From contig NC_135758.1 of the NCBI RefSeq assembly GCF_052425735.1, positions 1,612,001-1,676,000 of the forward strand: 64,000 nucleotides of DNA. Direction: 5' to 3'. The notes beneath the pieces are model-generated. The model was not told the DNA's origin, ran no database searches, and saw only the letters and a list, made by a program, of their open reading frames with translations. Below, one piece after another: positions 11,684 through 25,003 of the stretch. How positions within the stretch are numbered: position 1 is the first letter of the stretch; every line of letters begins with the position of its first letter. The translations under genes were made by a program, and so were the position numbers. This stretch comes from Oculina patagonica. Lineage: Eukaryota.

Positions 11684-13670
11684 TAGTTCTGTCAACACTT
11701 ATCTGCTCCATAGCGATTGATCCAGTGGATGATGTCATCCAACCCTTGAACAACGGCCCTGAAGTCAAAAGGAGTAAAAATAATAATCTGTGAGAACCGG
11801 GTACCTAGGGGTGTTGTATGAAAAAAAGAAAGTGAACAAGTGGAGCTCCCTAGCCTCTACTCGCTTAATTTTTTTAGCCCTATACCCCACTGGCAGGGAC
11901 TGCGTACACAGGCTACAGTAAGTCAGTAAAGAACGAGAAATAAAGATCACACAATTCTGCACTTTATAATAGTTGTGAGTTTTCTTTCTGGAACTGCTAT
12001 GTTTAAGCAGGACTCCTGCGTTAAGAAAAGGGAAAAACTTTTCCAGTGTTTACTTATGCCTCATCGCGCCCCGGAGGACGCTTGAGACAGTTCAGAAAAG
12101 CACTCCATGCGTCTCGGTTTTCCCGTGCACAGGGTTTCAGAAACTTGAATTTGGGGGAACGAGAACCTTGACAAACGAGCTGTAGGTTGGCGGTTGTTTC
12201 TATAATTTGCTCCACAACAACGTGTAGTAACAGACCTAGTGAAACCTTGTTGGTCGCCAGGGATTCGATAAAAACCCTAAGCGGGTCAGACAAACGAAAT
12301 CAACTAACCATCACGCTTCCAACCACCCCCCTCCCCTCCCCTCCAAAAAAAGAAACTCAATCAAGATCAAAAAAACGACACGCTTTCTCTTAGGCTATTT
12401 TGAAAAGTGAATTTCTATTAAAGTGCCGTACAAAAGTAACGTAAATATCTCTAAAACAGAAGAAGATATTTCAAAAAGGAAAACGCATTTCTTCTTTATT
12501 TTGAATTATAAAAGCCTTTTAAATAAACAGCAATCATAGACACTCCAAATTGGGAAAACATCAAGGTAAAACCACGATATGATGTGTCCCTGAAAAAACT
12601 GTACAAGCTTCATTCTTTAGATCTCTTTACTAATCCTTTCGGGACTGTGACCTATGGTGAACCCTTTTAAATCACTTTTTTCCGGTCCGTAGGCTCTTAA
12701 AGAAATACGTCCTGGTTTATCCATAGTTATAACTTATAGTGTTTACGTACGCAGGGGTTCTAGTCAATTTTTTTGTAAATTGCAAATATAGCAACGAGAT
12801 AAGGATTTAAATTCTCGTGACGTGACGAAGCAAAAGATATATATATATAAAGACAACATGTGTTTGGTATTAAAAATTCACTTACAAACAATAGCCTGCG
12901 AGCAGGCTCCCAGGCCAAGTGGGGGGTTTATTACGCGAGCGTAGCGAGCAGAAGAGCGGGCTAACAAACGCTTATCGCTTATTATAAAAACCTATTCGAC
13001 CTATTCAAACGACGATGATGAAATCTTTAGGAAGACAGTATAACTATTTCGCAGGATTTTATTTCCAGAATCTGACCAAAAGTATGGCCCGCCGGAATGA
13101 AACAATTCACTGACATTTTTGCTATATTTTGACATAAAAATAAGCTGACTTAATTAGTTAGACAATATCAGGGATTAAAAAAATTATTATACCGTCCGAA
13201 CGACTTGTAAGCCGGTGCTTATTTGCTTAAAGGCAGGTACGCGCCTGGTAAACCTCTCACTATAATGTCTATAAAATGAACATGCATGTTCGCATGTTCC
13301 TAACTCTTGATCTTTCCCGCGCTTTTCTTCCGCCTGGTTGTGCGCGCCGATGTGCGGCTTCCCGCTTTTTTCCCGCCAAATGATCCCCCAACAACTACAA
13401 AGTTTGAGTAGTTTGAGTCCATTTATCGTTTATCTGCTTATAAAAATACTTCGTGCCAGCTACATGAATGATCGATGTACACTGAACACAAATGAATTTC
13501 TCACTTGTCTTTTACGTCAACCTTTCAAGGAAAAAACAACATCACTGTAAGTGGATAAAGTGAAAGGTCAAACTTCCGGTATCCTATCGTGATGTCGTGG
13601 AATGGAAACGCCCCCTGCCTCCAGAACTCTGCACGCGGCCGCCGGTCTCCATTTAAAAACGACACAAATT

Positions 13671-16600
13671 ATGGCTTATAAACTCCTCTTTTACACGTTT
13701 CTTCCCCTGTTACTGGGTTGCCTTGCCGAATTTACCGGAAGGTAAGTTCTGAGTACCTTATGCTTCATAATTTTGTTGGTCTTCGCGACAGCAAATTGCG
13801 AATTCTGCGTTCACGTGTATACATGAAGACTCCATCACCGTCTTCATGAAATATGTTGTTTTGAGAGGCTTTTATCTCGATGCTATCTAATCTAACGTAT
13901 TTTCAGTTTGCTTTTGTCTTTACGGGGAAGGTTGCGTAGGGCTAGAAATACATTTAGCCTAGCTGGGGAATTTGTAAACGATATTTGTTTTCCCCAAGAG
14001 GGAGCACAACGTAAAATCAATCATGGGTTGAATTCATTCACTTACTTCGTTGCCTTTCGAAAGAGGCGATTATAACTCCCGCAATACTTGCAAAACTCGA
14101 TTTTACGTTTCAAATTCCTCGTGTAGCTTGTTTTTCCGTATCTGATAACGCAAAGAAGCGAAAATCGAGTCATCTGAGGTCTGCGGAAATGTTACATTGT
14201 ACAAAGTTAATCCCTGCGGTCCCTACAAGGGTCAACCTGGGTCAAGTGAATGTTTACACCATATTTCATACTACAGATTTCACAGGTAATTTCCCTTTCG
14301 TGACATAATCGATTTTCTTCGCTAACATCGCGGTTTAACCTTGATTTTGTTGACGAAAATCAATTTTGTTAATTTTGTTAGAATTATAAAACAAATTTGA
14401 AGCAACCATGCATTTCTACAGGAGGGGCCTAATTGCCTAAACAGGGGAAATGGGAACTGGGATATAGGTAAATTTTCATTGTGAAAATGAGATTTGGGTC
14501 AATGGGACTGAAATCTTAAAAAAAAATTGGGAATGGGGCTGGGACTTGGGTAAAAGATAGGCTGGAAAATAGGTTTTGGGCAAAATTTGGGCTAGGAAAT
14601 GGGAATAATCCTCCCTCCCTTGCTTCCCACCCCTTCACCTTCAGCACCCTCCTGCAGCTGTACCTACCTTTGGAACTTTTAAATGGGCTATCTGAAGAAG
14701 AGTAAACCCCATACATTCAATCTTTGAGGAGTTTGGTTATTTTTCTTTGTATAACCATAAAAGATACTTCTGTAAAATTAATAGAGAAAAAAAACTTAGG
14801 GAAGGTATGCAGTATGAAAAATCTGGAAGAAAAAGGTCAAAATAAAAAATATAGTAAAATAAAAAAATGTTCTGCATTCCAATGGTTTTGCTGCTATCTT
14901 TTTAAGATGCTAAACTAACAGTCAATTAGCATTGTTACACAATTTTATTACTGGTATGTTTGTTTGTGTCTTTTTAGGAATCCTCCAAAAATAGTTACCA
15001 AAGATGGAAACCTAGTTTTAAAAGCTGGCGAGGATGGTGACATTGTTTTTGAACCTGGTCAGGGAAAACAAGTGTTTATTGGAGGAAATGTCTTGGTAAG
15101 ATGGGCTGAGCGAACCACTGAGTGTATGTGAAGATAAGACCCTTCCACATCCTGATAAAAAGTAGAGCAGATACTCTGTATTATTTTTGGCATGCCTACT
15201 GTATTCTTTTATATCTGCTGTGTGAATAAAAGTTTTGGATCTTTTTTGTAGAATGTCTCTGGAGTTGCCGGCACTAAGGGAGAGGTATTTATGTTTTTTT
15301 TTTTTTTTTTTAAATATACAAATAAAAAAGACTTTTTATTTTTCAACAACAATGATATAAATGAAGAAGTGTTCTCAAGTTGAAATCTCGGAAAAAAGAT
15401 TTTCCGAGTACCCCCAACGGGAGTCGAACCCATGACCTTCCAAGATTACCGGTTGGACGCTCTAACCACTGAGCTATGGGAGACTCGTGGTGAGCGAGGT
15501 CATATACTAGGTTCTTATGTGTGACACATGTCCTGCCATATCTGCAAGGCTTAATATGTCGAAATGATAAATGTGGATAAATGTAAAGTGAAATGGCAAC
15601 TTGGATAAAGTGAAGTAAATGAAGAAGTGTTCTCAAGTTGAAATCTCGGAAAAAAGATTTTCCGAGTACCCCCAACGGGAGTCGAACCCATGACCTTCCA
15701 AGATTACCGGTTGGACGCTCTAACCACTGAGCTATGGGAGACTCGTGGTGAGCGAGGTCATATACTAGGTTCTTATGTGTGACACATGTCCTGCCATATC
15801 TGCAAGGCTCAATATGTCTCAGCTCAGTGGTTAGAGCGTCCAACCGGTAATCTTGGAAGGTCATGGGTTCGACTCCCGTTGGGGGTACTCGGAAAATCTT
15901 TTTTCCGAGATTTCAACTTGAGAACACTTCTTCATTTACTTCACTTTATCCAAGTTGCCATTTCACTTTACATTTATCCACTTCAACTTGAGAACACTTC
16001 TTCATTTACTTCACTTTATCCAAGTTGCCATTTCACTTTACATTTATCCACATTTATCATTTTGACATATTGAGCCTTGCAGATATGGCAGGACATATGT
16101 CACACATAAGAACCTAGTATATGACCTCGCTCACCACGAGTCTCCCATAGCTCAGTGGTTAGAGCGTCCAACCGGTAATCTTGGAAGGTCATGGGTTCAA
16201 CTCCCGTTGGGGGTACTCGGAAAATCTTTTTTCCGAGATTTCAACTTGAGAACACTTCTTCATTTACTTCACTTTATCCAAGTTGCCATTTCACTTTACA
16301 TTTATCCACTTCAACTTGAGAACACTTCTTCATTTACTTCACTTTATCCAAGTTGCCATTTCACTTTACATTTATCCACATTTATCATTTTGACATATTG
16401 AGCCTTGCAGATATGGCAGGACATATGTCACACATAAGAACCTAGTATATGACCTCGCTCACCACGAGTCTCCCATAGCTCAGTGGTTAGAGCGTCCAAC
16501 CGGTAATCTTGGAAGGTCATGGGTTCAACTCCCGTTGGGGGTACTCGGAAAAAATCTTTTTTCCGAGATTTCAACTTGAGAACACTTCTTCATTTACTTC

Positions 16601-19600
16601 ACTTTATCCAAGTTGCCATTTCACTTTACATTTATCAACAATGATATAATAACTCGTCCTGTATTTTTCTGTGTTTTAAGAAAGGGGATCCAGGAATCCA
16701 AGGGCAAGTAAGTAAACAAGCTTTGAATTATTGTCTTACTTTTATATATACCGGGTATTTATATTTTCAAACAAAAATTATATATACAGGGATGGAAGTT
16801 AGGACTCACACTCAATTCTTTTGGGTATTTCCAAATTCAACAGTTTTTCAGTGCATTTCTTCAGGTCACTTCCCCAGATGCAAGAACTGTCAAAATTAAG
16901 TTTCCATGTCTGTAAGTGTTAATATTTTTCAGACGCAAGTGGGACAGTGAGTCCAATGGTTGGACTTTCAGTCCGCCAGGCCATCCATCATTCATTTATT
17001 CAGTCACGCAGGCAGGCAGCCCATCAGTCTGTCAGTGCAGCAGTCAGACTGTCTGTCAGTCTCTGAGTCAGTCAATCCATCAGTCATTCCATCAGTCGGT
17101 TGGTGGATCATCTAATAAGCAGCTAAGCCACAAGTCTGCTGAGACCAGACATAAGAAATAGATTATGTTGTTACCGCTGACCAGTTAGCTCAGTTGGTAG
17201 AGTGCTGGACTGCCGTGCCGTAGGTTTCAGGTTCGACTCCCAGACCGAACCAACATTCAGGGAATGTGCTGTCTTTGCAGTGACATCTGCAAATGGTTAG
17301 ATGTTCTAGCCTTCTCTTCTCTTGTATTTATTTTGGCTTTTATTTATAGTTGATGTGATGTCTTACAAGATTTTATCAACTTAATAAATGTAGATGTAGA
17401 TGGATGATAAACCGTAGGCCCCGTCTCCTGCATCTTCAGTGTTATGGTCACCAGGGGATGTTAACACACTTAACGCAAAGAGTAGGGCACAGATTTCCTG
17501 GTGTGGTGGTCTGGCCTATTCAATTGAATCTGTGGGTTGGGTGGTGGGACGAGACCATATACATTGACGGATTGCAGTTGCCAAAGGTGCCTAATATGCT
17601 GATGTCCAATCTCGTTCTGTAACTCCAACTGTGAAGCCCATTGAGCTTTGTAAAATTTAATGCGCTATACAAGAATCATTACCATAGATTAACATGATTG
17701 TGTGATTCTTTGTTGCATTTGCTCAAGAATGGAAGCAAAGGAGAAAAGGGGGAAGCAGGCCCGCCAGGACAGATAGTGTCTACGGTAATATTCTAAACAG
17801 CTTAGTTTCAAATGAAATTAGCTGGCTTAATTTTTTAACTGAGGCAAACTTAACAACTTGGAAAATATGACTAAGATTGTATGACATTGTTTTCCCACCT
17901 CCATAATTTAGAATGGGACTGTTAATGTTACTGGACCTCCTGGACAAAAAGGAGAAAAAGGGATCCAGGGCATAACAGGTACAAAAGGAGATGCAGGCCT
18001 TAATGGAACAAAAGGACAGGTGAGTTGCTCCCTCTTGTTTTTAACATGTAGACTTGCACCAAGTCGCCCTCTATTGGTGAGGGAAGCGAGCCGAAAAGCG
18101 TGGCGAAGCGACGCGCAGCGAGTCGCCAGGCGACGACCGCGAGTGACAAAGTCGCGAGAGTGACATACCTAAACCGTTTCTTTTCCTAAACCGTGCATCG
18201 AAGGACTTTGAGAGTCTGTTTAACATGTTGACTTTGTGGTGTTATCTGTGCTTTAATGTGTATCATTAGTCATATCAGGTATCTCAGTTTAATTCAATAT
18301 TGATTACAAAATTTGTTCATTTAGAAAGGTGAACCAGGCATTCAAGGACCTGGAGGGAAGGTGAGTGAAAAAGCTGATTATAAACAGTACCAATGATTAT
18401 TGAAAACAATTTGAAAACATATGGCGCAAGATCTTTCTCCGTGGCAGCTCCTACACTCTGGAATACTCTACCTTCTGACAATAAGAACAGCTCCTCAGTA
18501 TCCCTTTTAAAACATAAACTTAAAACTTTCCTTTTTAAAAAAGCATTTTTATAACTTTTTAGCAACATTTTTTATTAGTCTAAGATTTTAAGCATTTTTT
18601 GTAACCTTTTAACTATTTTTATATTTATTTTTTTTAATAGTGTTTTTAATATTTTTAACGTTACTTCTGTAAAGCGCTTTTGAACTTTTAGGATATTGGC
18701 GCTATATAAATATTTTATTATTATTTATTATTATTATTATGAATGTACTGGTACATTTATGTAGAGCTTCTAGGATTGTGTTTTCCATAGGAGGAAGCGC
18801 AACTTAAGTTAAGGAGAGTTGCTTCTGGGTGGGAAAGTGACCCAATGCCAGGTAATGCCAGCTTACTACAGCAAGATGTAGAAGAAGCAAGGAATTCATA
18901 ATAAATTATTAGAATCCTGATTTCTCGAACATCCAAGGAATAAGAATTTGTTAAATACCAAGAAACCCTCTGATGATTCTTAAAAAGGTCAGATTCAGCA
19001 GGACGCACAAGCGTGTTTGCCACACAAACTACATTTCAACATCGCAAGACAGGGTCCCTCCCTTTAATGCACATGCATAACATTGCTGACAAAACATGAC
19101 AGAATTGTTTCAAGAAATCGGAAGTGTGAAAAAAAGGGGTAAAGTTGTAGCATTTGAAGCACTACAAGTGAAACAACTGTTGGTTCGAGTAAGGTATTGA
19201 GAGGTTGTTTTTTGCTGAATACTAATTACAGTGACATACATGTGATATCTGTAAGTAATTCCTGCCAGTTGTGTTCTTTATAGAATGGATCTGATGGAAT
19301 TCAGGGCCCTCCTGGTGTAAATGGAACAAAAGGTGACAGTGGACCACAAGGCCCAGCTGGCCCTTTATTTAATACCCTCAATCAGACCACTTTGAGGTAG
19401 AACCTTTTATATAATTATAATCCTTGAACTATGACTCAGCTTATTCAAGCAAATGAAGGAAAGAAATCATTCTACTTTGTTTGGCTCATTATAATAAGTA
19501 ACTACTTCAAGAAAGAGTTAGTCGATGACTGCCACAAGCTATGTTGGAAAAAATTTCCAAATTTATCCAATGTTAGCTAAACCATGAATTTCCACATACC

Positions 19601-21341
19601 GGTACTGGTCAGACGCTCAGCTACATATACAGTGATGATTTGTGGTAGAGCATCTAATTGGTGTGACTTCAGAAGGTCATAGGTTTGAACAGCTGATGTG
19701 AGAAATGTTCAGAATTCTCTCCAATTAATTAGCTGGTGTCAGTCAAATAATAGCGACCTTTAGATTGGACTACGAGTACGAAATTGAGTACGAGTACAAG
19801 TTTTCAAATCAAGTTTGTGTGCCTCCTATAATCACTTATCACACCAATCTTATCCCTAACCTTTTTTTATGTGTTAGTCAGCAACAGGAAAGAGTTATAG
19901 TTCGGGGGATACAATTGTTTTGAAATTCCAAATTAAACTTTAACTCATTTTCTATCTTGTACTCTAAGTCAGATCTAAAGGTAGCTAGTAAATAGATCAT
20001 TAGATAAATTTACTGGTACATTCTACATCCCATTGTTAATTTTTCTCATTTTTTGTCACCTATTGCTAAAACAAGCTTAACATGTACTAATTAGACTGCC
20101 ACTATTTTGTTGACATGTTTTTCTTGTCATATTGACAACATACAAAATGTCATTTTGATTTCTGACAAGAATAGAATAACAAAGAATATAAGAGTGCAAA
20201 TCTTATAAGGAAGGTTGCTCATTTTAAAATTTTAATGACCTAACGTCTCTTTTCAGATGCAAGAATACCAGTGATCATGGCTCAGTTAGGTTCATGTCAG
20301 GACATCTTCAGGTAATCGTAACACATTTATTGTTTAAACTTGTATTGTGTACTTATTAAGCTCTAGTAACTAGAGAACTTGTATGCCAGGCAATTACAGA
20401 ACTGCAAATCTACCATTCCTACCCAGATTTTGAAATGACATTCCTTTTACTCCTTAATTTAGTTGCACTGATTCAATCACATTTTCAAGGTCTGCACCAA
20501 GTTAGGTTGGCAGCAGCTGGGGTATCAGGATAGTTCATGTGAAGAACTGAATGTGCCAAGGATGAACCATGAAGCCTTCCAAACCTCAACGTTTGGCATT
20601 TTACTCCAGTTCAATGGGGATCTGCTTGTTAACCTCAGTCCCAACATGAACTACACAAACATGACAACAGGTAATATATTACCTTACAGTCAGGCTGGAA
20701 ATTATAATCCAGATTGCTCAGTTTAAGAACTGCTTAAATAATTTGCAATAAAGAAAGACTTCTTTCACCAAGCAAAACAAAATTATTGGATTCCTTTTTT
20801 CCTTATTGAATTTCATTTTACAGGGATGCTTATTATTGATTTTTAATTATCAATAATATTGTTCAGGCTGTCAATACTAACGGATTATTTCTTAATTTGG
20901 ATACATTAAATTCAAGTTACTAAGTGACACTGAGTAATTTGGCTTGGTTCCTGCAAATCTTCTTTGAACTGCAGGCTGACATTCCTTGGATTTTTTTTAT
21001 CCCATCAAATCATTGGAGAGCATGTAGTCCCTATTACGTTATAAATAATAACATATAATGAAAAAAGCAGCAGCAAAATCTTGTCAGAAATCATTGATGT
21101 AGTCAATTAGTGTAATTTAATATGTAATTATTAAAAACTAGCAATGGTATATTGCAATTTCTGCATTTTGATTGGTTAACAGGCAATGGTATATGAGCTC
21201 ATATACAATTGACCACAAATATGGTAGCTGATACGCGTCAACAAAAAAAAACTGGGGAGCTCAAATATTGCAATTCTTTTGGGCGTTTTAAATGAAACAA
21301 TTATTCCACTCGCACTTGTTGGAGAAAAGTTGGCTATAATG

Positions 21342-21372
<31 letters not shown>

Positions 21373-24300
21373 CTGTTTTATTAAAAATGCCCAGAGAATT
21401 GCAATATTTGAGCTTCCAGCTTGTTTCCTGTTAACCAATGAAAACTTAGGAATTGTAATATACCATAAAGACATTGTTAGTTGTTAAGGTCGTTGCCCTG
21501 TATTGCATTGCGCATCCTTACTGCGCAGAATTTTACGCGTAATTTGCTCGCGCACATAAACAAAATGGCGGCTTTTTTCTATGCGGCTTAGTCCGTGAGA
21601 GAAGTCAAGTGTCGCTTTCTCGTAAACTAGTCTGGTGACCTATCAATTTTTTCTCATATTTTGGGTGTAGTGATCAAATTCTTTCTGTCAAATGAAAACA
21701 GATCAATTCTTGTGCTTAAAAAATAAATTATCGTTAAAAACGTGTACTTTGCTAGTACTCGCAGAGGATTTTTAAAGGAAATATATGAAATATACAAGGT
21801 CTTCCCGCTCCTAAACGAATCTGGTGACCCCCCTTTTTTATTTCAAAATTAAAGTTCCCTTAAAGTAATAAACCAGTAGGCGAAGTTTGGTTAAAAATCT
21901 ATGTTCAGTTTTATTTCGGGGCAATGACCTTAATAACATCTCATATCCAACACATGCTCGTGGAATAACTGTTAAATATAGGACTCTTAGGAAGACCATA
22001 GTAATATATTATATAATGATAATAATAATAATAATAAATACTATTATATATTATTTTATAATTATTATATTATACTGTGAGTTAGACTTTGTATTAAAAC
22101 AGATTGATGATGAACTTAAAATTTCATACTTCCACTTGTTTTAGAGTACAAACAAAATGCAGGACGGAACTTCACTCAATACACTCAAAGTACAATGGGC
22201 CAGGCAGTCCAGCTTAAAGAACTGGAGTACATCAATTTATATGGCATTCCAGCAGGTTTCTGGAGTGGCGATGAATGGTCTGTTATGAGCTTGATTAAGT
22301 TTCGTGATGATGGTATATTAGGCAGTAGCAAAGAGGATCCTGTTTTGGGAGATGGAACACCTGCAAATGATCAGGGGTTTCATCTTGGACTGAAAAATAA
22401 GGTATTACCTTACAGATGTCAGCACAAGGATTACATTGTGATTTTTAAGATTGTTGTAAAATAAATACTAGTTCAGGGCTTGAAAAACATGAATTCCAAC
22501 CTTGGCTTTCAGAAAAGTGTGTGGGAGCTGCATTGGCCTAATGGTTAGTGTGCTGGACTCCAAAGAGAGTAAAGTGTCTTGCTCAAGAATACACTGTGTT
22601 GTGTTCTTGGGCAAGACACTTGACTTTACTCTCCTTTTGCCTCTCTTCACCCAGGTGTATAAATGGACTAGCCTGGGTCCCCTGCCCATTTGGCATTGAA
22701 ATAAGTAAGCATACAAAGTTACTTGCTCAGCAGGAAACTTAACTTGCCCTCGATGAAAGGATGGGACTCCTTTCAAGCCCTGTAGTTGTGACTGACAATC
22801 ACTGACAATGGTTTCTTAATAGATAATCGCAAAATTACACGTCAAAATTTATTAAATTTTATAAATTATAAATTTATTATGGAAATATTGTTCTGATTAT
22901 GTGCAATCTGTTGTAATCATGTCATTGCAAAGAATTCCAAATTCCCTGTTATCACATCAGTCATATGGCTTCAGTGTACCCTTGGCTAACATTCGTTACA
23001 ATTTGTTGTTCAATACATGTTGCTACTTAGCTGCTGATGCCATGTCAATGTGCACCACATTTTCATCCATCATTCTAGTAGCTTATGTCACTCTTGAATA
23101 TCTTTCTAAGGAGCAATGTGACTGTCAGTTATAGTCAATGCTATTGAAAAGAAATGTTTCTTTGCTGATGTTTTTAACTTGCATTTTTCACCAGAAAGTA
23201 CTGTATGGATTCTACTCCAGTGATATCGAGGGGAATGCTGACCTAGATTACGACAAGTGGTACCAAGTTACATGGACTTGGAAAAAAAGTAACAAAATGC
23301 GGTAAGAGGACTTATACACAGTGACACACTAAAAAAAGAAAGAAAGAGGTTAAACATCTACAACAGTACAGTAATATCACGTCTTAAGGTGGCTTAATAC
23401 AGTTTTGAGAGGGCAAATCAGTGCAATCTTCAACTCTCTTGTACAATCTCCAGAAAAGTTTTTTCTTTCTCTTATCACTATTTGTTACATCCTAAAACCA
23501 TCATATGCGATATTTGGAAAATAAAAATGCTAATAAACAGCTTAAATGGGCGGCCGAGTGCTTGAGAGGGGACTGGCACTAGTAGTTTAAACGGTGTTTT
23601 TCTCAAAATCTACCCGTACGACCCTACCTCAAAATTTCAGAAAAAAGAAACTGGCTTTGAATTATCATTCATGCAAAATAATAAAAAAATCTGTAAGACA
23701 GATTTTTCGCAAAATAGGAAACTGTGATATTTTGCCGATTTTTAAAATAGCTCAAAATCTGTCTTACAGATTTTTTCAAAATTTTGGCTGTGGACGTTGT
23801 TCACCCCTTAAATTTAATTGTGAAAGTTTCATAATAGGTTGTACGGTAGGTTTTCGAGAAAATCTGGATCAAAATCTGGCTTTTACAACCTCCGAAGCGA
23901 ATCAAATTGCGCGTGCGAGCGCGCGCTAATATGACGCCATTCATCGCGAGCGATAATGAAAGACAGATTTAGAACTTCTCTGTCGGTTGTTTATCCACCA
24001 TTTTGTCATGTTGTTTTCTCGTCCCAGGTTTCATGACCTATCTGAAAGTATTTTTTTAATTTTTTTTCGTATACAAATTTGGTAAAGCGCGGTAAAACAG
24101 ATGGAACTCTTTTTCGTTTCTGTTCAGAGTTGCTAGCGCCATTTTAGTCCGCGCGAGCGGACTAAAATTCGGACTAAAATTTCTGCTTGACGTCAAGCAG
24201 AAAATCGTAGCGCGCGCTATTGAGCCACGTAAAAACTGACTGTATTCAGCCACCTTAAGTGGGACCAAATATTTCAACCACAACCAGTTCTGGTTGAAGT

Positions 24301-25003
24301 GTCTTGTCCTAATAGACCACTTTTCCAACTGGTTTTCATTGAAACAGTTGATAAGCATTCAGTTGCATTTTATTTCGTTGTGTTTTAAAATTGGGATTGA
24401 TTAAGCTTTCTGGTGTCCTATTGAAAAAACCTGTTTTTAGCTTGATTTGGTTGAACAGATTGTTAAATATTGATCTACCATTGTCATCAAAAAGTGTTTT
24501 TTGAAAACCTAAACCAAGTCAACTGTTTCAACCTAGTTAGATGACAGTTGAAAAAGTATATCAACTGGAAATGTTTTTTCTTTTTTCTTTGTTTTTTGCT
24601 TGTTTGACATGTTTGTTTTTTCAAATAGAACATGAAAAAAAAAATCAATGCAACCAACCTAAAACCGTTGATCCCAAAAAGAACATGACCAAACTCTTTT
24701 TATTTATTATTTTTAATTATTGAATAAAGTGTTGTGATGAGTTTTGACATCATTTTCTCTCACAAACAGATTTTTTTTAATCCCTACAGGAAAATTTTCA
24801 TTGATGGCAAAATAGACATCGCAGACAACTCTAACAATGCTTATCAAGGAATTAGTGGAAACACACAAATTGGAACGTGGTGGAGTGGAAAGAAAACTAA
24901 CTTAGAGATTGATACTCTTTACATTATTGACAAGGCAATAGAGTATACCCCAGTCAACCAGCAATTATGTTTTGCCAAGGTTTTTAACTCTAACATGCCT
25001 TAG
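13671..25003 (+). CDS. Secreted short-chain collagen-like protein, about 447 aa, 12 exons: signal peptide, cubilin-N-terminal-like segment, 31 Gly-X-Y triplets, Cys neck, C-terminal LamG/ConA-like domain
   Basis: Exons 13671-13741, 14978-15095, 16681-16707, 17728-17784, 17912-18019, 18325-18360, 19284-19396, 20257-20311, 20490-20670, 22145-22401, 23195-23301, 24790-25003 are all GT-AG and phase-compatible (1344 nt). Signal MAYKLLFYTFLPLLLGCLA; collagen GDPGIQ...GPQGPAGPL; LamG-like DKWYQVTWTW...KIFIDG...TQIG...IDTLYII. Confidence 0.88.
15361..16635. mobile_element. Inverted-plus-tandem concatemer of a tRNA-derived unit (258/328 bp) within one 14-bp TSD
   Basis: Two minus-strand copies (period 258) and three plus-strand copies (period 328), junction about 15818-15821. 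A box TAGCTCAGTGG, B box GGTTCRACTCC. TSD CAACAATGATATAA at 15347-15360 and 16636-16649. Confidence 0.88.
17176..17300 (+). mobile_element. tRNA-derived SINE head (degenerate)
   Basis: TAGCTCAGTTGGTAGAG and GGTTCGACTCC boxes without a proper cloverleaf. Confidence 0.6.
18400..18740 (+). mobile_element. 3' end of an L2-group LINE
   Basis: Encodes LKTYGARSFSVAAPTLWNTLP...KLKTFLFKKAF, followed by an (ATT)n tail. Confidence 0.8.
21488..21929. mobile_element. TTAA-TSD MITE (Kolobok-like)
   Basis: TTAA|GGTCGTTGCCC ... GGGCAATGACC|TTAA. Confidence 0.8.
23388..24254. mobile_element. TTAA-TSD MITE (Kolobok-like), 867 bp
   Basis: TTAA|GGTGGCTTAATACAGT ... ACTGTATTCAGCCACC|TTAA. Confidence 0.85.

What the first reader, a model, noticed from the sequence alone, without database searches (positions are those of the whole stretch)
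13671..25003. Secreted chimeric protein: cubilin-like N-terminal segment + glycosylated collagen stalk + LamG head (possible new defense-collagen-like family)
Seen: 12 phase-compatible exons give signal peptide - NPPKIVTKDGNLVLKAGEDGDIVFEPGQGKQVFIGG - 8+23 Gly-X-Y triplets rich in N-G-S/T sequons - CKNTSDHGSVRF..LQVC..GW neck - LamG/ConA-like domain. Established: the cubilin N-terminus ([35 protein letters not shown], recalled) forms an intertwined trimeric beta-helix that docks on amnionless. Collectins, ficolins and C1q use a collagen stalk plus a recognition head. Inference: exon 2 aligns by eye with the cubilin segment (P-x5-GNLV-x-x-x-G-x-x-x-I-x-F-x-x-G), so this could be a trimeric collectin-like pattern-recognition or matrix protein that docks on amnionless as an alternative endocytic ligand-binding subunit. 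I know of no named family with this architecture.
Basis: partly seen in the sequence, partly recalled or inferred. Interest (0 to 1): 0.8.

Follow-up and report, generated by a model that had tools for sequence, protein, structure and literature searches.

The report
Coral collagen-stalked lectin-like protein, cubilin-type tip
This is a real, expressed, single-copy coral gene for a secreted three-chain protein with a collagen stalk, three sugar-binding-type (LamG) heads, and an N-terminal tip whose best match among solved structures is the interlocking domain by which cubilin docks on amnionless; no function has been described for the family.

Summary
Thirteen GT-AG exons (not 12) at 13671-25003 (+) give a 458-aa ORF. 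It is 100% identical to an NCBI protein annotated only as hypothetical/uncharacterized (Oculina patagonica). A 1174-nt spliced contig in a run guessed to be RNA joins exons 1-2-...-9.

- **Family:** single-copy here. Every named ortholog is hexacorallian (stony corals, Nematostella) and uncharacterized.
- **Cubilin-like tip, moderately supported:**
  - The family profile finds human cubilin (6GJE) at rank 4 of 177,635 PDB sequences (E 0.25, gapless over 34 residues).
  - hhalign probability is 88.8%.
  - The fold model's top three PDB matches are the three cubilin chains (best E 0.08; next hit E 4.3).
  - The homotrimer model scores 0.73 against 0.01 for controls, with intertwined strand contacts.
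- **Not tested:** amnionless docking. An amnionless gene exists in the genome. The coral cubilin N-terminus could not be located.

Best reading: a secreted, collectin-like homotrimer locked by a cubilin-type β-helix. This is a new variant of a known kind.

The parts
13671..13741 (+). Exon 1: start codon and signal peptide (residues 1-24; cleavage after about residue 19 is inferred)
   Evidence: RNA-type contig X4 starts at 13663 and joins 13739/41 to 14976/78. The hydrophobic stretch is read from the sequence; no signal-peptide predictor was run.
14978..15095 (+). Exon 2: the whole cubilin-type N-terminal module (residues 24-63). It holds an N-terminal strand P27-K28-I29 and three ~10-residue G-x-hydrophobic-x-hydrophobic units.
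   Evidence: Invariant P27, K28, I29, G34, G41, G44, I46, F48, E49, V56, G59, L63 and N64 in 9 family members. Profile hit to cubilin 6gje_B, E 0.25, gapless over 34 residues. hhalign probability 88.8%. Foldseek ranks 1-3 are 6GJE chains C, D and B. Trimer model ipSAE 0.73 against 0.01 for controls.
15252..17784 (+). Exons 3-5 (15252-15284, 16681-16707, 17728-17784): invariant sequon N64 and the first collagen block, 11 Gly-X-Y triplets (residues 67-99), ending in a 10-residue interruption
   Evidence: Pfam Collagen PF01391 at 57.8 bits for the whole protein. Exon 3 is present in diverged form in contig X4 (table 5c).
17912..19396 (+). Exons 6-8 (17912-18019, 18325-18360, 19284-19396): second collagen block, 23 Gly-X-Y triplets (residues 110-178) with N-G-S/T sequons, and the start of the neck
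   Evidence: GT..AG joints 18017>18323 and 18358>19282 in runs X1, X2 and X4.
20257..20670 (+). Exons 9-10 (20257-20311, 20490-20670): Cys-containing neck (C189, C208, C223; small three-stranded sheet) and the start of the head
   Evidence: Nearly invariant C189, N191, S193; invariant G196, R199, L205, Q206, C208, T209, G212, W213. Model strands at residues 198-201, 204-209 and 212-215. The loose end of contigs X1 and X4 after 19396 matches the start of exon 9.
22145..25003 (+). Exons 11-13 (22145-22401, 23195-23301, 24790-25003): LamG_3 / ConA-like jelly-roll head, C-terminal Cys448 and the stop codon

Best explanation
The locus is a single-copy anthozoan gene for a secreted, heavily N-glycosylated homotrimer.

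Exon 2 encodes a cubilin-type module. Three chains wind into one intertwined three-turn β-helix, which locks them together at the N-terminus and sets the register for the collagen triple helix that follows. That helix has 11 + 23 Gly-X-Y triplets, with a 10-residue hinge between the blocks.

A small disulfide-stabilised β neck then presents three C-terminal LamG_3/ConA-like jelly-roll heads. Their closest structural relatives are carbohydrate-binding modules.

The molecule therefore most likely works like a collectin or ficolin. It would be a multivalent, stalked recognition protein that binds glycans or another repeated ligand, on microbes or in the matrix, through avidity of three heads.

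Shown:
- the gene model
- splicing of exons 1-9 (exons 10-13 rest on the annotation and orthologs)
- conservation across the family
- the collagen repeats
- the LamG fold (model)
- the cubilin-like fold and trimer (models)

Inferred: secretion, glycosylation, the ligand class and the biological role.
For: Gene and mRNA. Orthologs with the same plan in Nematostella, Orbicella, Pocillopora, Porites, Montipora, Acropora and Desmophyllum, all 'uncharacterized'. Several come from short intron-less contigs, e.g. 462 aa on 2327 nt.

N-terminal module:
- The profile of 9 sequences hits cubilin 6gje_B with the best single-domain score in the PDB (13.4 bits, E 0.25). The alignment is gapless over 34 residues.
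- Read from that gapless alignment and the residue numbering of PMC6283879: I29, L36, L38, I46, F48, V56 and I58 all fall on hydrophobic cubilin residues, and P27, G34, N35, G41 and G51 on identical ones.
- I29 falls on Met44, the hydrophobic centre of the amnionless interface (PMC6283879).
- hhalign probability 88.8%, P 2.5e-6.
- None of 20,000 shuffles reaches the real score (15.9 bits against a maximum of 10.2). The most divergent family member is the most cubilin-like, 13/34 identical.
- Foldseek ranks 1-3 of 350,542 chains are the three cubilin chains. Best E is 0.083, probability 0.99, rmsd 2.6 Å over 37 columns; rank 4 has E 4.3.
- Homotrimer of residues 22-98: ipSAE 0.73 against a best control of 0.01. 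That mark was reached by 21 of 30 proteins solved as pairs of one chain and 0 of 23 solved as single chains. Partner pLDDT is at least 84 and the runs agree in at least 97% of contacts. Strand 1 of one chain pairs with strand 2 of the next, and strand 2 with strand 3.

Glycosylation: 13 sequons; N64 and N191 are invariant in 10 of 10 family members.
Against: - The sequence match to cubilin is not significant at database level (E 0.25-0.4).
- 6GJE predates the structure predictors. The fold and trimer models may therefore echo it rather than test it, and the complex tool itself warns of this.
- The trimer calibration was done on dimers of microbial proteins.
- The Oculina head scores below Pfam's Laminin_G_3 cut-off.
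- The best structural matches include BoNT/NTNH Hcn domains, which have no known glycan binding, so ligand class is a guess.
- No expression, localisation or binding data exist for any family member.
Confidence: 0.55

Rival explanations
1. Alternative cubam subunit. The trimeric β-helix tip docks end-on onto β-helix 1 of amnionless, as cubilin does. The collagen-LamG trimer would then be membrane-anchored and internalised through amnionless' endocytic motifs, acting as a second ligand-binding arm of an ancient endocytic receptor.
For: - The strand that forms the amnionless interface in cubilin (residues 42-49, centre Met44; PMC6283879) aligns with the most conserved part of the module. P27, K28 and I29 are invariant even in members only about 35% identical overall.
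- The motif starts 6-7 residues from the predicted mature N-terminus in both proteins.
- Open-ended β-helices need a cap, and cubilin depends on amnionless to leave the ER.
- The genome has an amnionless gene (PF14828 hits above the cut-off at G000:C9:23884833-23890061).
- In Drosophila, two different cubilin paralogues share one amnionless (PMC8710305).
Against: - No test of binding was possible.
- The cubilin-amnionless interface is mostly main-chain, so conservation of the strand is weak evidence.
- In Drosophila Cubn2 this region is not conserved, so the region tolerates change in true cubilins.
- A soluble role needs no partner.
Confidence: 0.2
2. Matrix cross-linker. The protein is a structural or matricellular mesoglea component. 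The open β-helix ends associate end-to-end, or with another matrix protein, to give dumbbell-like dimers of trimers whose LamG heads bridge matrix or cell-surface ligands. There would be no role in recognising non-self.
For: - β-helices are known to associate end-to-end unless capped (PMC6283879).
- Mollusc shell-matrix proteins appear among the structural matches that also cover the neck.
- The family occurs in both calcifying and non-calcifying anthozoans.
Against: The best head matches are microbial carbohydrate-binding modules, not matrix LamG domains. The protein could not be identified in the Nematostella matrisome paper, because no link from the NCBI gene name to that paper's gene identifiers was available. 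No evidence of higher oligomers exists.
Confidence: 0.15
3. The cubilin resemblance is chance or convergence. Exon 2 would be a family-specific non-collagenous N-terminal segment with a β-rich repeat, and the structure predictors simply borrowed the nearest memorised template.
For: E 0.25 in the PDB search means such a score is expected by chance about once in four searches; cGMP-dependent kinase segments score as high for the whole sequence. VIA-align finds nothing. The module was found in no other protein of 252-801 aa. The coral's own cubilin N-terminus could not be found for comparison.
Against: - Cubilin gives the longest and only gapless full-module alignment.
- All seven core hydrophobic positions are in register.
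- The same position relative to the mature N-terminus, and the same number of turns (three), are found.
- In both proteins the module is followed by a parallel three-chain rod.
- Similarity rises in the most divergent family members.
- The three cubilin chains stand about 50-fold in E-value above the next Foldseek hit.
- In 190 kb of unrelated coral DNA translated in six frames, the best profile score was 7.8 bits and the motif regex found nothing.
Confidence: 0.25

Closest known systems
Cubilin N-terminal region (human CUBN residues 36-75 in PDB 6GJE, complex with amnionless)
   Same: - 27-38% identity across family members in a gapless 34-residue alignment.
- Pro and the hydrophobic centre residue of the N-terminal strand are matched.
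- Three G-x-hydrophobic-x-hydrophobic turns, at the same distance from the mature N-terminus.
- Predicted N-terminal hairpin and intertwined three-chain β-helix.
- Followed by a parallel three-chain rod.
   Different: The rod is a collagen triple helix, not a coiled coil. There are no EGF or CUB domains. Binding to amnionless is untested. Sequence significance is borderline.
Defence collagens: collectins (MBL, SP-A/D), ficolins, C1q
   Same: Secreted; short N-terminal oligomerisation segment, interrupted collagen stalk, neck, then three C-terminal globular heads. Multivalent recognition by avidity is the expected mode of action.
   Different: The head is a LamG_3/ConA-like jelly roll, not a C-type lectin, fibrinogen-like or gC1q domain. 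The neck is a small disulfide-bonded β unit, not an α-helical coiled coil. The N-terminus is a β-helix rather than a Cys-rich segment. No MASP-binding motif or immune role has been examined.
Laminin_G_3 (PF13385) carbohydrate-binding-type jelly rolls: GH43 AbnA domain 4 (5HON), sialidase CBM40, clostridial neurotoxin/NTNH Hcn
   Different: Only 13-17% identity. The relatives are bacterial, sit in enzymes or toxins, and are not on a collagen stalk. Ligand-binding residues were not compared.
Collagens with LamG/TSPN domains (collagen IX NC4, XV, V/XI)
   Different: In those collagens the LamG/TSPN domain is N-terminal and the chains are long matrix collagens. Here it is C-terminal on a 34-triplet stalk.

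Membership tests
Collagen triple-helix proteins (PF01391) | Uninterrupted Gly-X-Y repeats scoring above Pfam's cut-off | tested here: met
   57.8 bits against a cut-off of 27.2. Blocks of 11 and 23 triplets.
Laminin_G_3 / ConA-like lectin-glucanase superfamily (PF13385) | Sequence score above Pfam's gathering cut-off | tested here: inconclusive
   Oculina 21.2 bits, below 27.6. Nematostella ortholog 34.3 bits, above 27.6. A divergent member scores 20.9 bits.
Laminin_G_3 / ConA-like lectin-glucanase superfamily (PF13385) | Two-sheet jelly-roll fold | tested here: met
Cubilin N-terminal β-helix module | Sequence or profile similarity to cubilin residues 40-73 | tested here: inconclusive
   hmmsearch E 0.25, rank 4 of 177,635. 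hhalign probability 88.8%. 0 of 20,000 shuffles reach the score.
Cubilin N-terminal β-helix module | Chain conformation like cubilin in 6GJE | tested here: met
Cubilin N-terminal β-helix module | Three chains intertwined into one β-helix | tested here: met
   ESMFold2 trimer ipSAE 0.73 against a best control of 0.01. The mark was reached by 21 of 30 proteins solved as pairs and 0 of 23 solved as single chains. pLDDT at least 84, contact agreement at least 97%. Staggered inter-chain strand contacts. In silico only.
Cubilin N-terminal β-helix module | End-on docking to amnionless β-helix 1 | not testable with these tools
Cubilin (the protein) | Eight EGF repeats and 27 CUB domains after the N-terminal region | tested here: not met
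   Pfam finds only Collagen and Laminin_G_3. The protein is therefore not a cubilin.
Collectins / ficolins / C1q family | C-type lectin, fibrinogen-like or gC1q head | tested here: not met
   No such Pfam hit. The head is a LamG-type jelly roll.

The most novel reading that the evidence does not exclude
The interlocking β-helix by which cubilin trimerises and docks on amnionless is an ancient, portable module, and amnionless has at least one non-cubilin client. In anthozoans a collagen-stalked LamG trimer would use the same tip to sit on amnionless. This would create a second, collectin-like ligand-binding arm of the cubam endocytic receptor.
Probability: 0.15. Interest if true: 0.85.

Novelty: new variant of a known kind. 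Interest (0 to 1): 0.62.

Why it matters

A second animal protein family carrying the module, fused to collagen instead of a coiled coil, would show that the module is a general trimer-locking device. It would also make a specific question testable: does amnionless anchor proteins other than cubilin?

Independently of that, the family adds a LamG-headed member to the collagen-stalked recognition proteins of cnidarians. These animals rely on innate recognition of symbionts and microbes, yet their soluble pattern-recognition repertoire is poorly characterised. The gene is single-copy and conserved from sea anemone to reef corals, so it can be studied in Nematostella.

Tried and rejected
- **Single-exon searches.** Exon 2 alone found no Pfam family, and cubilin was not among its PDB matches up to E 10. 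The other exons alone gave no Pfam hit except Collagen on exon 6.
- **Own-genome searches for paralogs or a cubilin N-terminal exon**. The queries were exon 2, the family profile and the human cubilin segment. Only the gene itself was found. The query included five residues not taken from a tool output; it gave nothing and is not used.
- **Hunt for the coral cubilin gene** through CUB (PF00431) and EGF_CA (PF07645) clusters, with six-frame scans of 190 kb.
  - The C2 CUB cluster has Sushi/NIDO/VWD exons upstream and looks CSMD/SUSD2-like.
  - The C14 and C1 clusters showed no EGF exons upstream.
  - The C5 locus has at least 9 EGF exons before a CUB but no module-like exon.
  - So 'coral cubilin N-terminus not found with these queries'; absence is not shown.
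- **Other structure and feature searches.** VIA-align of the N-terminal model gave no match. ESM Atlas feature search of residues 22-66 gave only scores below 0.8.
- **Literature.** No paper names the orthologous loci. The Nematostella matrisome paper and its supplements could not be linked to this gene.
- **Second paralog.** A search of the Oculina genome with the divergent member P0023 returned, outside collagen repeats, only this gene's own exons.
- **Upstream ATG.** The 481-aa RefSeq model starts at an upstream ATG (13602). I prefer the 458-aa start for three reasons: the orthologs aligned in A1, except the N-terminally divergent P0146, begin with a comparable signal-peptide-like segment; the extension would bury that segment; and the X4 contig begins at 13663 right after adapter sequence.
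Full report

The window is eukaryotic, with about 39% GC and short exons in long introns. Joining the open segments at canonical sites gives 13 exons between 13671 and 25003 on the + strand. Every acceptor is AG and every donor GT, and the 1377-nt ORF has no stop. The 458-aa product is identical over its full length to P0026, GenBank KAL9986077.1 'hypothetical protein ACROYT_G000151 [Oculina patagonica]'. Contig C1 of the window's genome has the same length as that protein's contig.

RefSeq's model of the same gene (XP_078374604.1) differs only by 23 extra residues from an upstream ATG at 13602.

Splicing is seen directly in Logan contigs of three runs guessed to be RNA. One 1174-nt contig (X4) covers exon 1, exon 2, a diverged exon 3, exons 6 and 8, and reads on into exon 9. 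The GT..AG joints of introns 6 and 7 recur in X1, X2 and X4. Those contigs differ from the window at a few positions (95-99% alike), so they come from another individual or a close relative. They are supported by the annotation and by orthologs that lie on short intron-less contigs (462 aa on 2327 nt; 443 aa on 1496 nt).

There are 13 exons and 11 + 23 Gly-X-Y triplets.

**2. What is encoded?**

| Residues | Feature | Basis |
|---|---|---|
| 1-~19 | Hydrophobic signal-like segment | read from the sequence |
| 24-63 | One exon, no Pfam match; 13 invariant positions across nine family members down to 35% overall identity | |
| 64 | N-glycosylation sequon, invariant in 10 of 10 | |
| 67-99 and 110-178 | Collagen repeats, separated by a 10-residue break | Pfam Collagen 57.8 bits, |
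| 189-223 | Three Cys and a conserved G-x-V-R-F ... L-Q-V-C-T-x-x-G-W motif, modelled as a small three-stranded sheet | |
| ~230-445 | Jelly roll | |

The protein has 13 sequons in all, and N191 in the neck is also invariant.

The AlphaFold2 model of residues 178-458 has pLDDT 79.6 and pTM 0.76. Its structural matches are:

AFDB clusters matched are named 'LamG-like jellyroll'. Pfam Laminin_G_3 is above its cut-off in the Nematostella ortholog and below it here. So the 'LamG head' is right, of the Laminin_G_3 kind.

**3. The family**

A full-library phmmer search with exon 11 found only 23 proteins at E <= 0.001 among 1.84 billion representatives. Word-indexed searches with the full Nematostella ortholog, with the head and with the N-terminal module returned the same small set:

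- Nematostella, Orbicella, Pocillopora, Porites, Montipora, Acropora, Desmophyllum and Oculina
- three divergent members of unknown source

All are named 'uncharacterized', 'hypothetical' or, wrongly, 'collagen alpha-4(VI)'. The gene is single-copy in this genome. No paper mentions the loci.

**4. Is exon 2 cubilin-like?**

Sequence:

- The nine-sequence profile searched against all PDB sequences puts human cubilin (6gje_B) fourth, at E 0.25.
- That hit has the best single-domain score and the only alignment that spans the module. It is gapless, with profile positions 4-37 on cubilin residues 40-73.
- hhalign gives 88.8% probability and a pairwise P of 2.5e-6.
- The real segment scores 15.9 bits against a maximum of 10.2 in 20,000 shuffles.
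- Identity to human cubilin rises from 8-11 of 34 in the sea-anemone and stony-coral members to 11-13 of 34 in the divergent members. That is what shared ancestry predicts.

In the gapless alignment, P27 falls on P42 and I29 on Met44. Met44 is the hydrophobic centre of the amnionless interface formed by cubilin residues 42-49 (PMC6283879). All three pairs of alternating hydrophobic residues, and the turn glycines, are in register.

Structure:

- The AlphaFold2 monomer model of residues 22-98 is confident for the module (pLDDT 81-86) and has an N-terminal hairpin, as described for cubilin.
- Foldseek against 350,542 PDB chains returns the three cubilin chains as ranks 1-3 (E 0.083, 0.14 and 0.60; rmsd 2.4-3.4 Å). 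Rank 4 has E 4.3.
- A three-copy model scores ipSAE 0.73 against a best control of 0.01. That mark was reached by 21 of 30 proteins solved as pairs of one chain and 0 of 23 solved as single chains. The partner's pLDDT is at least 84 and the runs agree in at least 97% of contacts.
- Its most certain contacts pair strand 1 of one chain with strand 2 of the next, and strand 2 with strand 3. That is the signature of an intertwined β-helix, and the Gly-X-Y part is fully in contact.

Caveats:

- The database-level E-value is borderline.
- VIA-align finds nothing for this extended piece.
- 6GJE is old enough to be in the predictors' training data, so the models show likeness rather than independent proof.
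- I could not obtain invertebrate cubilin N-termini to sharpen the profile comparison.

I put the chance that the module has the cubilin-type fold and trimer at about 0.7. I put common descent somewhat lower.

**5. How it most likely works**

Three chains are interlocked at the N-terminus by the β-helix. A collagen triple helix with one hinge runs from it, where cubilin has a coiled coil. Three LamG heads sit at the far end behind a disulfide-stabilised neck. This is the plan of collectins, ficolins and C1q, with different parts. The head's nearest structural relatives bind carbohydrates. The best-supported reading is therefore a secreted, multivalent, glycosylated recognition or bridging molecule.

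Three further readings remain open:

- the tips self-associate to give a matrix cross-linker
- the cubilin likeness is convergent

An amnionless gene is present. In flies, one amnionless serves two cubilin paralogues (PMC8710305). The most conserved residues of the module are the ones equivalent to the interface strand. Nothing here tests binding.

**6. Comparison and novelty**

The protein is not a cubilin, since it has no EGF or CUB domains. It is not a collectin, ficolin or C1q, since it has a different head and neck. It is not a FACIT-type collagen, since its LamG domain is C-terminal. It is a new variant of the collagen-stalked trimeric recognition proteins, and it carries a module so far described only in cubilin. 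The family already exists in databases as unnamed predicted proteins. The gene itself is therefore not new; the reading of it is.

**7. Verdict**

The architecture and the cubilin-like tip hold; the amnionless docking and the defence role are open.
- Interest is 0.62: a specific, testable and rather unexpected link, resting on moderate in-silico evidence.

Noticed in passing
window 15408-16544 (intron 3): Four tRNA-Tyr(GTA)-like units, two on the - strand (15408-15483, 15666-15741) and two on the + strand (16141-16216, 16469-16544). They form an inverted-plus-tandem array inside the intron. The array has very high depth in the DNA-like run X16, so it is a high-copy tRNA-derived repeat.
   Followed up: partly
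window 17324-17519 (intron 4): A very high-copy repeat. Summed contig depth is about 169,000 in run X16, and it is also the deepest bin in the RNA-type runs. A tRNA-like stretch lies just upstream at about 17180-17250; it was read by eye and ARAGORN did not call it.
   Followed up: no
window 13602-13670: RefSeq's model (XP_078374604.1, 481 aa) starts at an in-frame upstream ATG, adding 23 residues ahead of the signal peptide. Contig X4 begins at 13663 directly after Illumina adapter sequence, and the orthologs aligned in A1, except the N-terminally divergent P0146, begin with a comparable signal-peptide-like segment. The 458-aa start is therefore more likely.
   Followed up: partly
residue 24, window 13740-13741 + 14978: In stony corals an Arg (K-R-R in Acropora) directly precedes the N-P-P-K start of the module. 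Cubilin's module follows a furin-cleaved propeptide (my own knowledge, not checked here). A convertase cut that exposes the module at the very N-terminus is conceivable but untested.
   Followed up: no
G000:C9:23884833-23890061 (+): Amnionless gene of this genome: four exon hits to PF14828, three above the cut-off. Single extra hits on C7 and C10 cover only the Cys-rich part of the profile and may belong to other genes.
   Followed up: no
G000:C5:29236086-29271726 (+); loci L026-L029: A gene with at least nine EGF/cbEGF exons followed by CUB exons (cubilin- or SCUBE-like). No module-like exon was found in the 23 kb fetched upstream of its first EGF exon (C5:29213001-29236085) or between the EGF exons.
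   Followed up: partly
G000:C2:38596458-38661999 (-); loci L008, L010: A cluster of at least 12 CUB exons with a Sushi exon and NIDO/VWD-like exons upstream. It looks CSMD/SUSD2-like, not cubilin.
   Followed up: partly
head model, residues 190-440 of the protein: Among reviewed proteins, a Mytilus shell matrix protein (P86860) and a Pinctada Asn-rich shell protein match the neck plus head (E 2.7e-8 and 6.4e-7). LamG-type domains recur in biomineral matrices. Relevance to coral skeleton is unknown, and the family also exists in the non-calcifying Nematostella.
   Followed up: no
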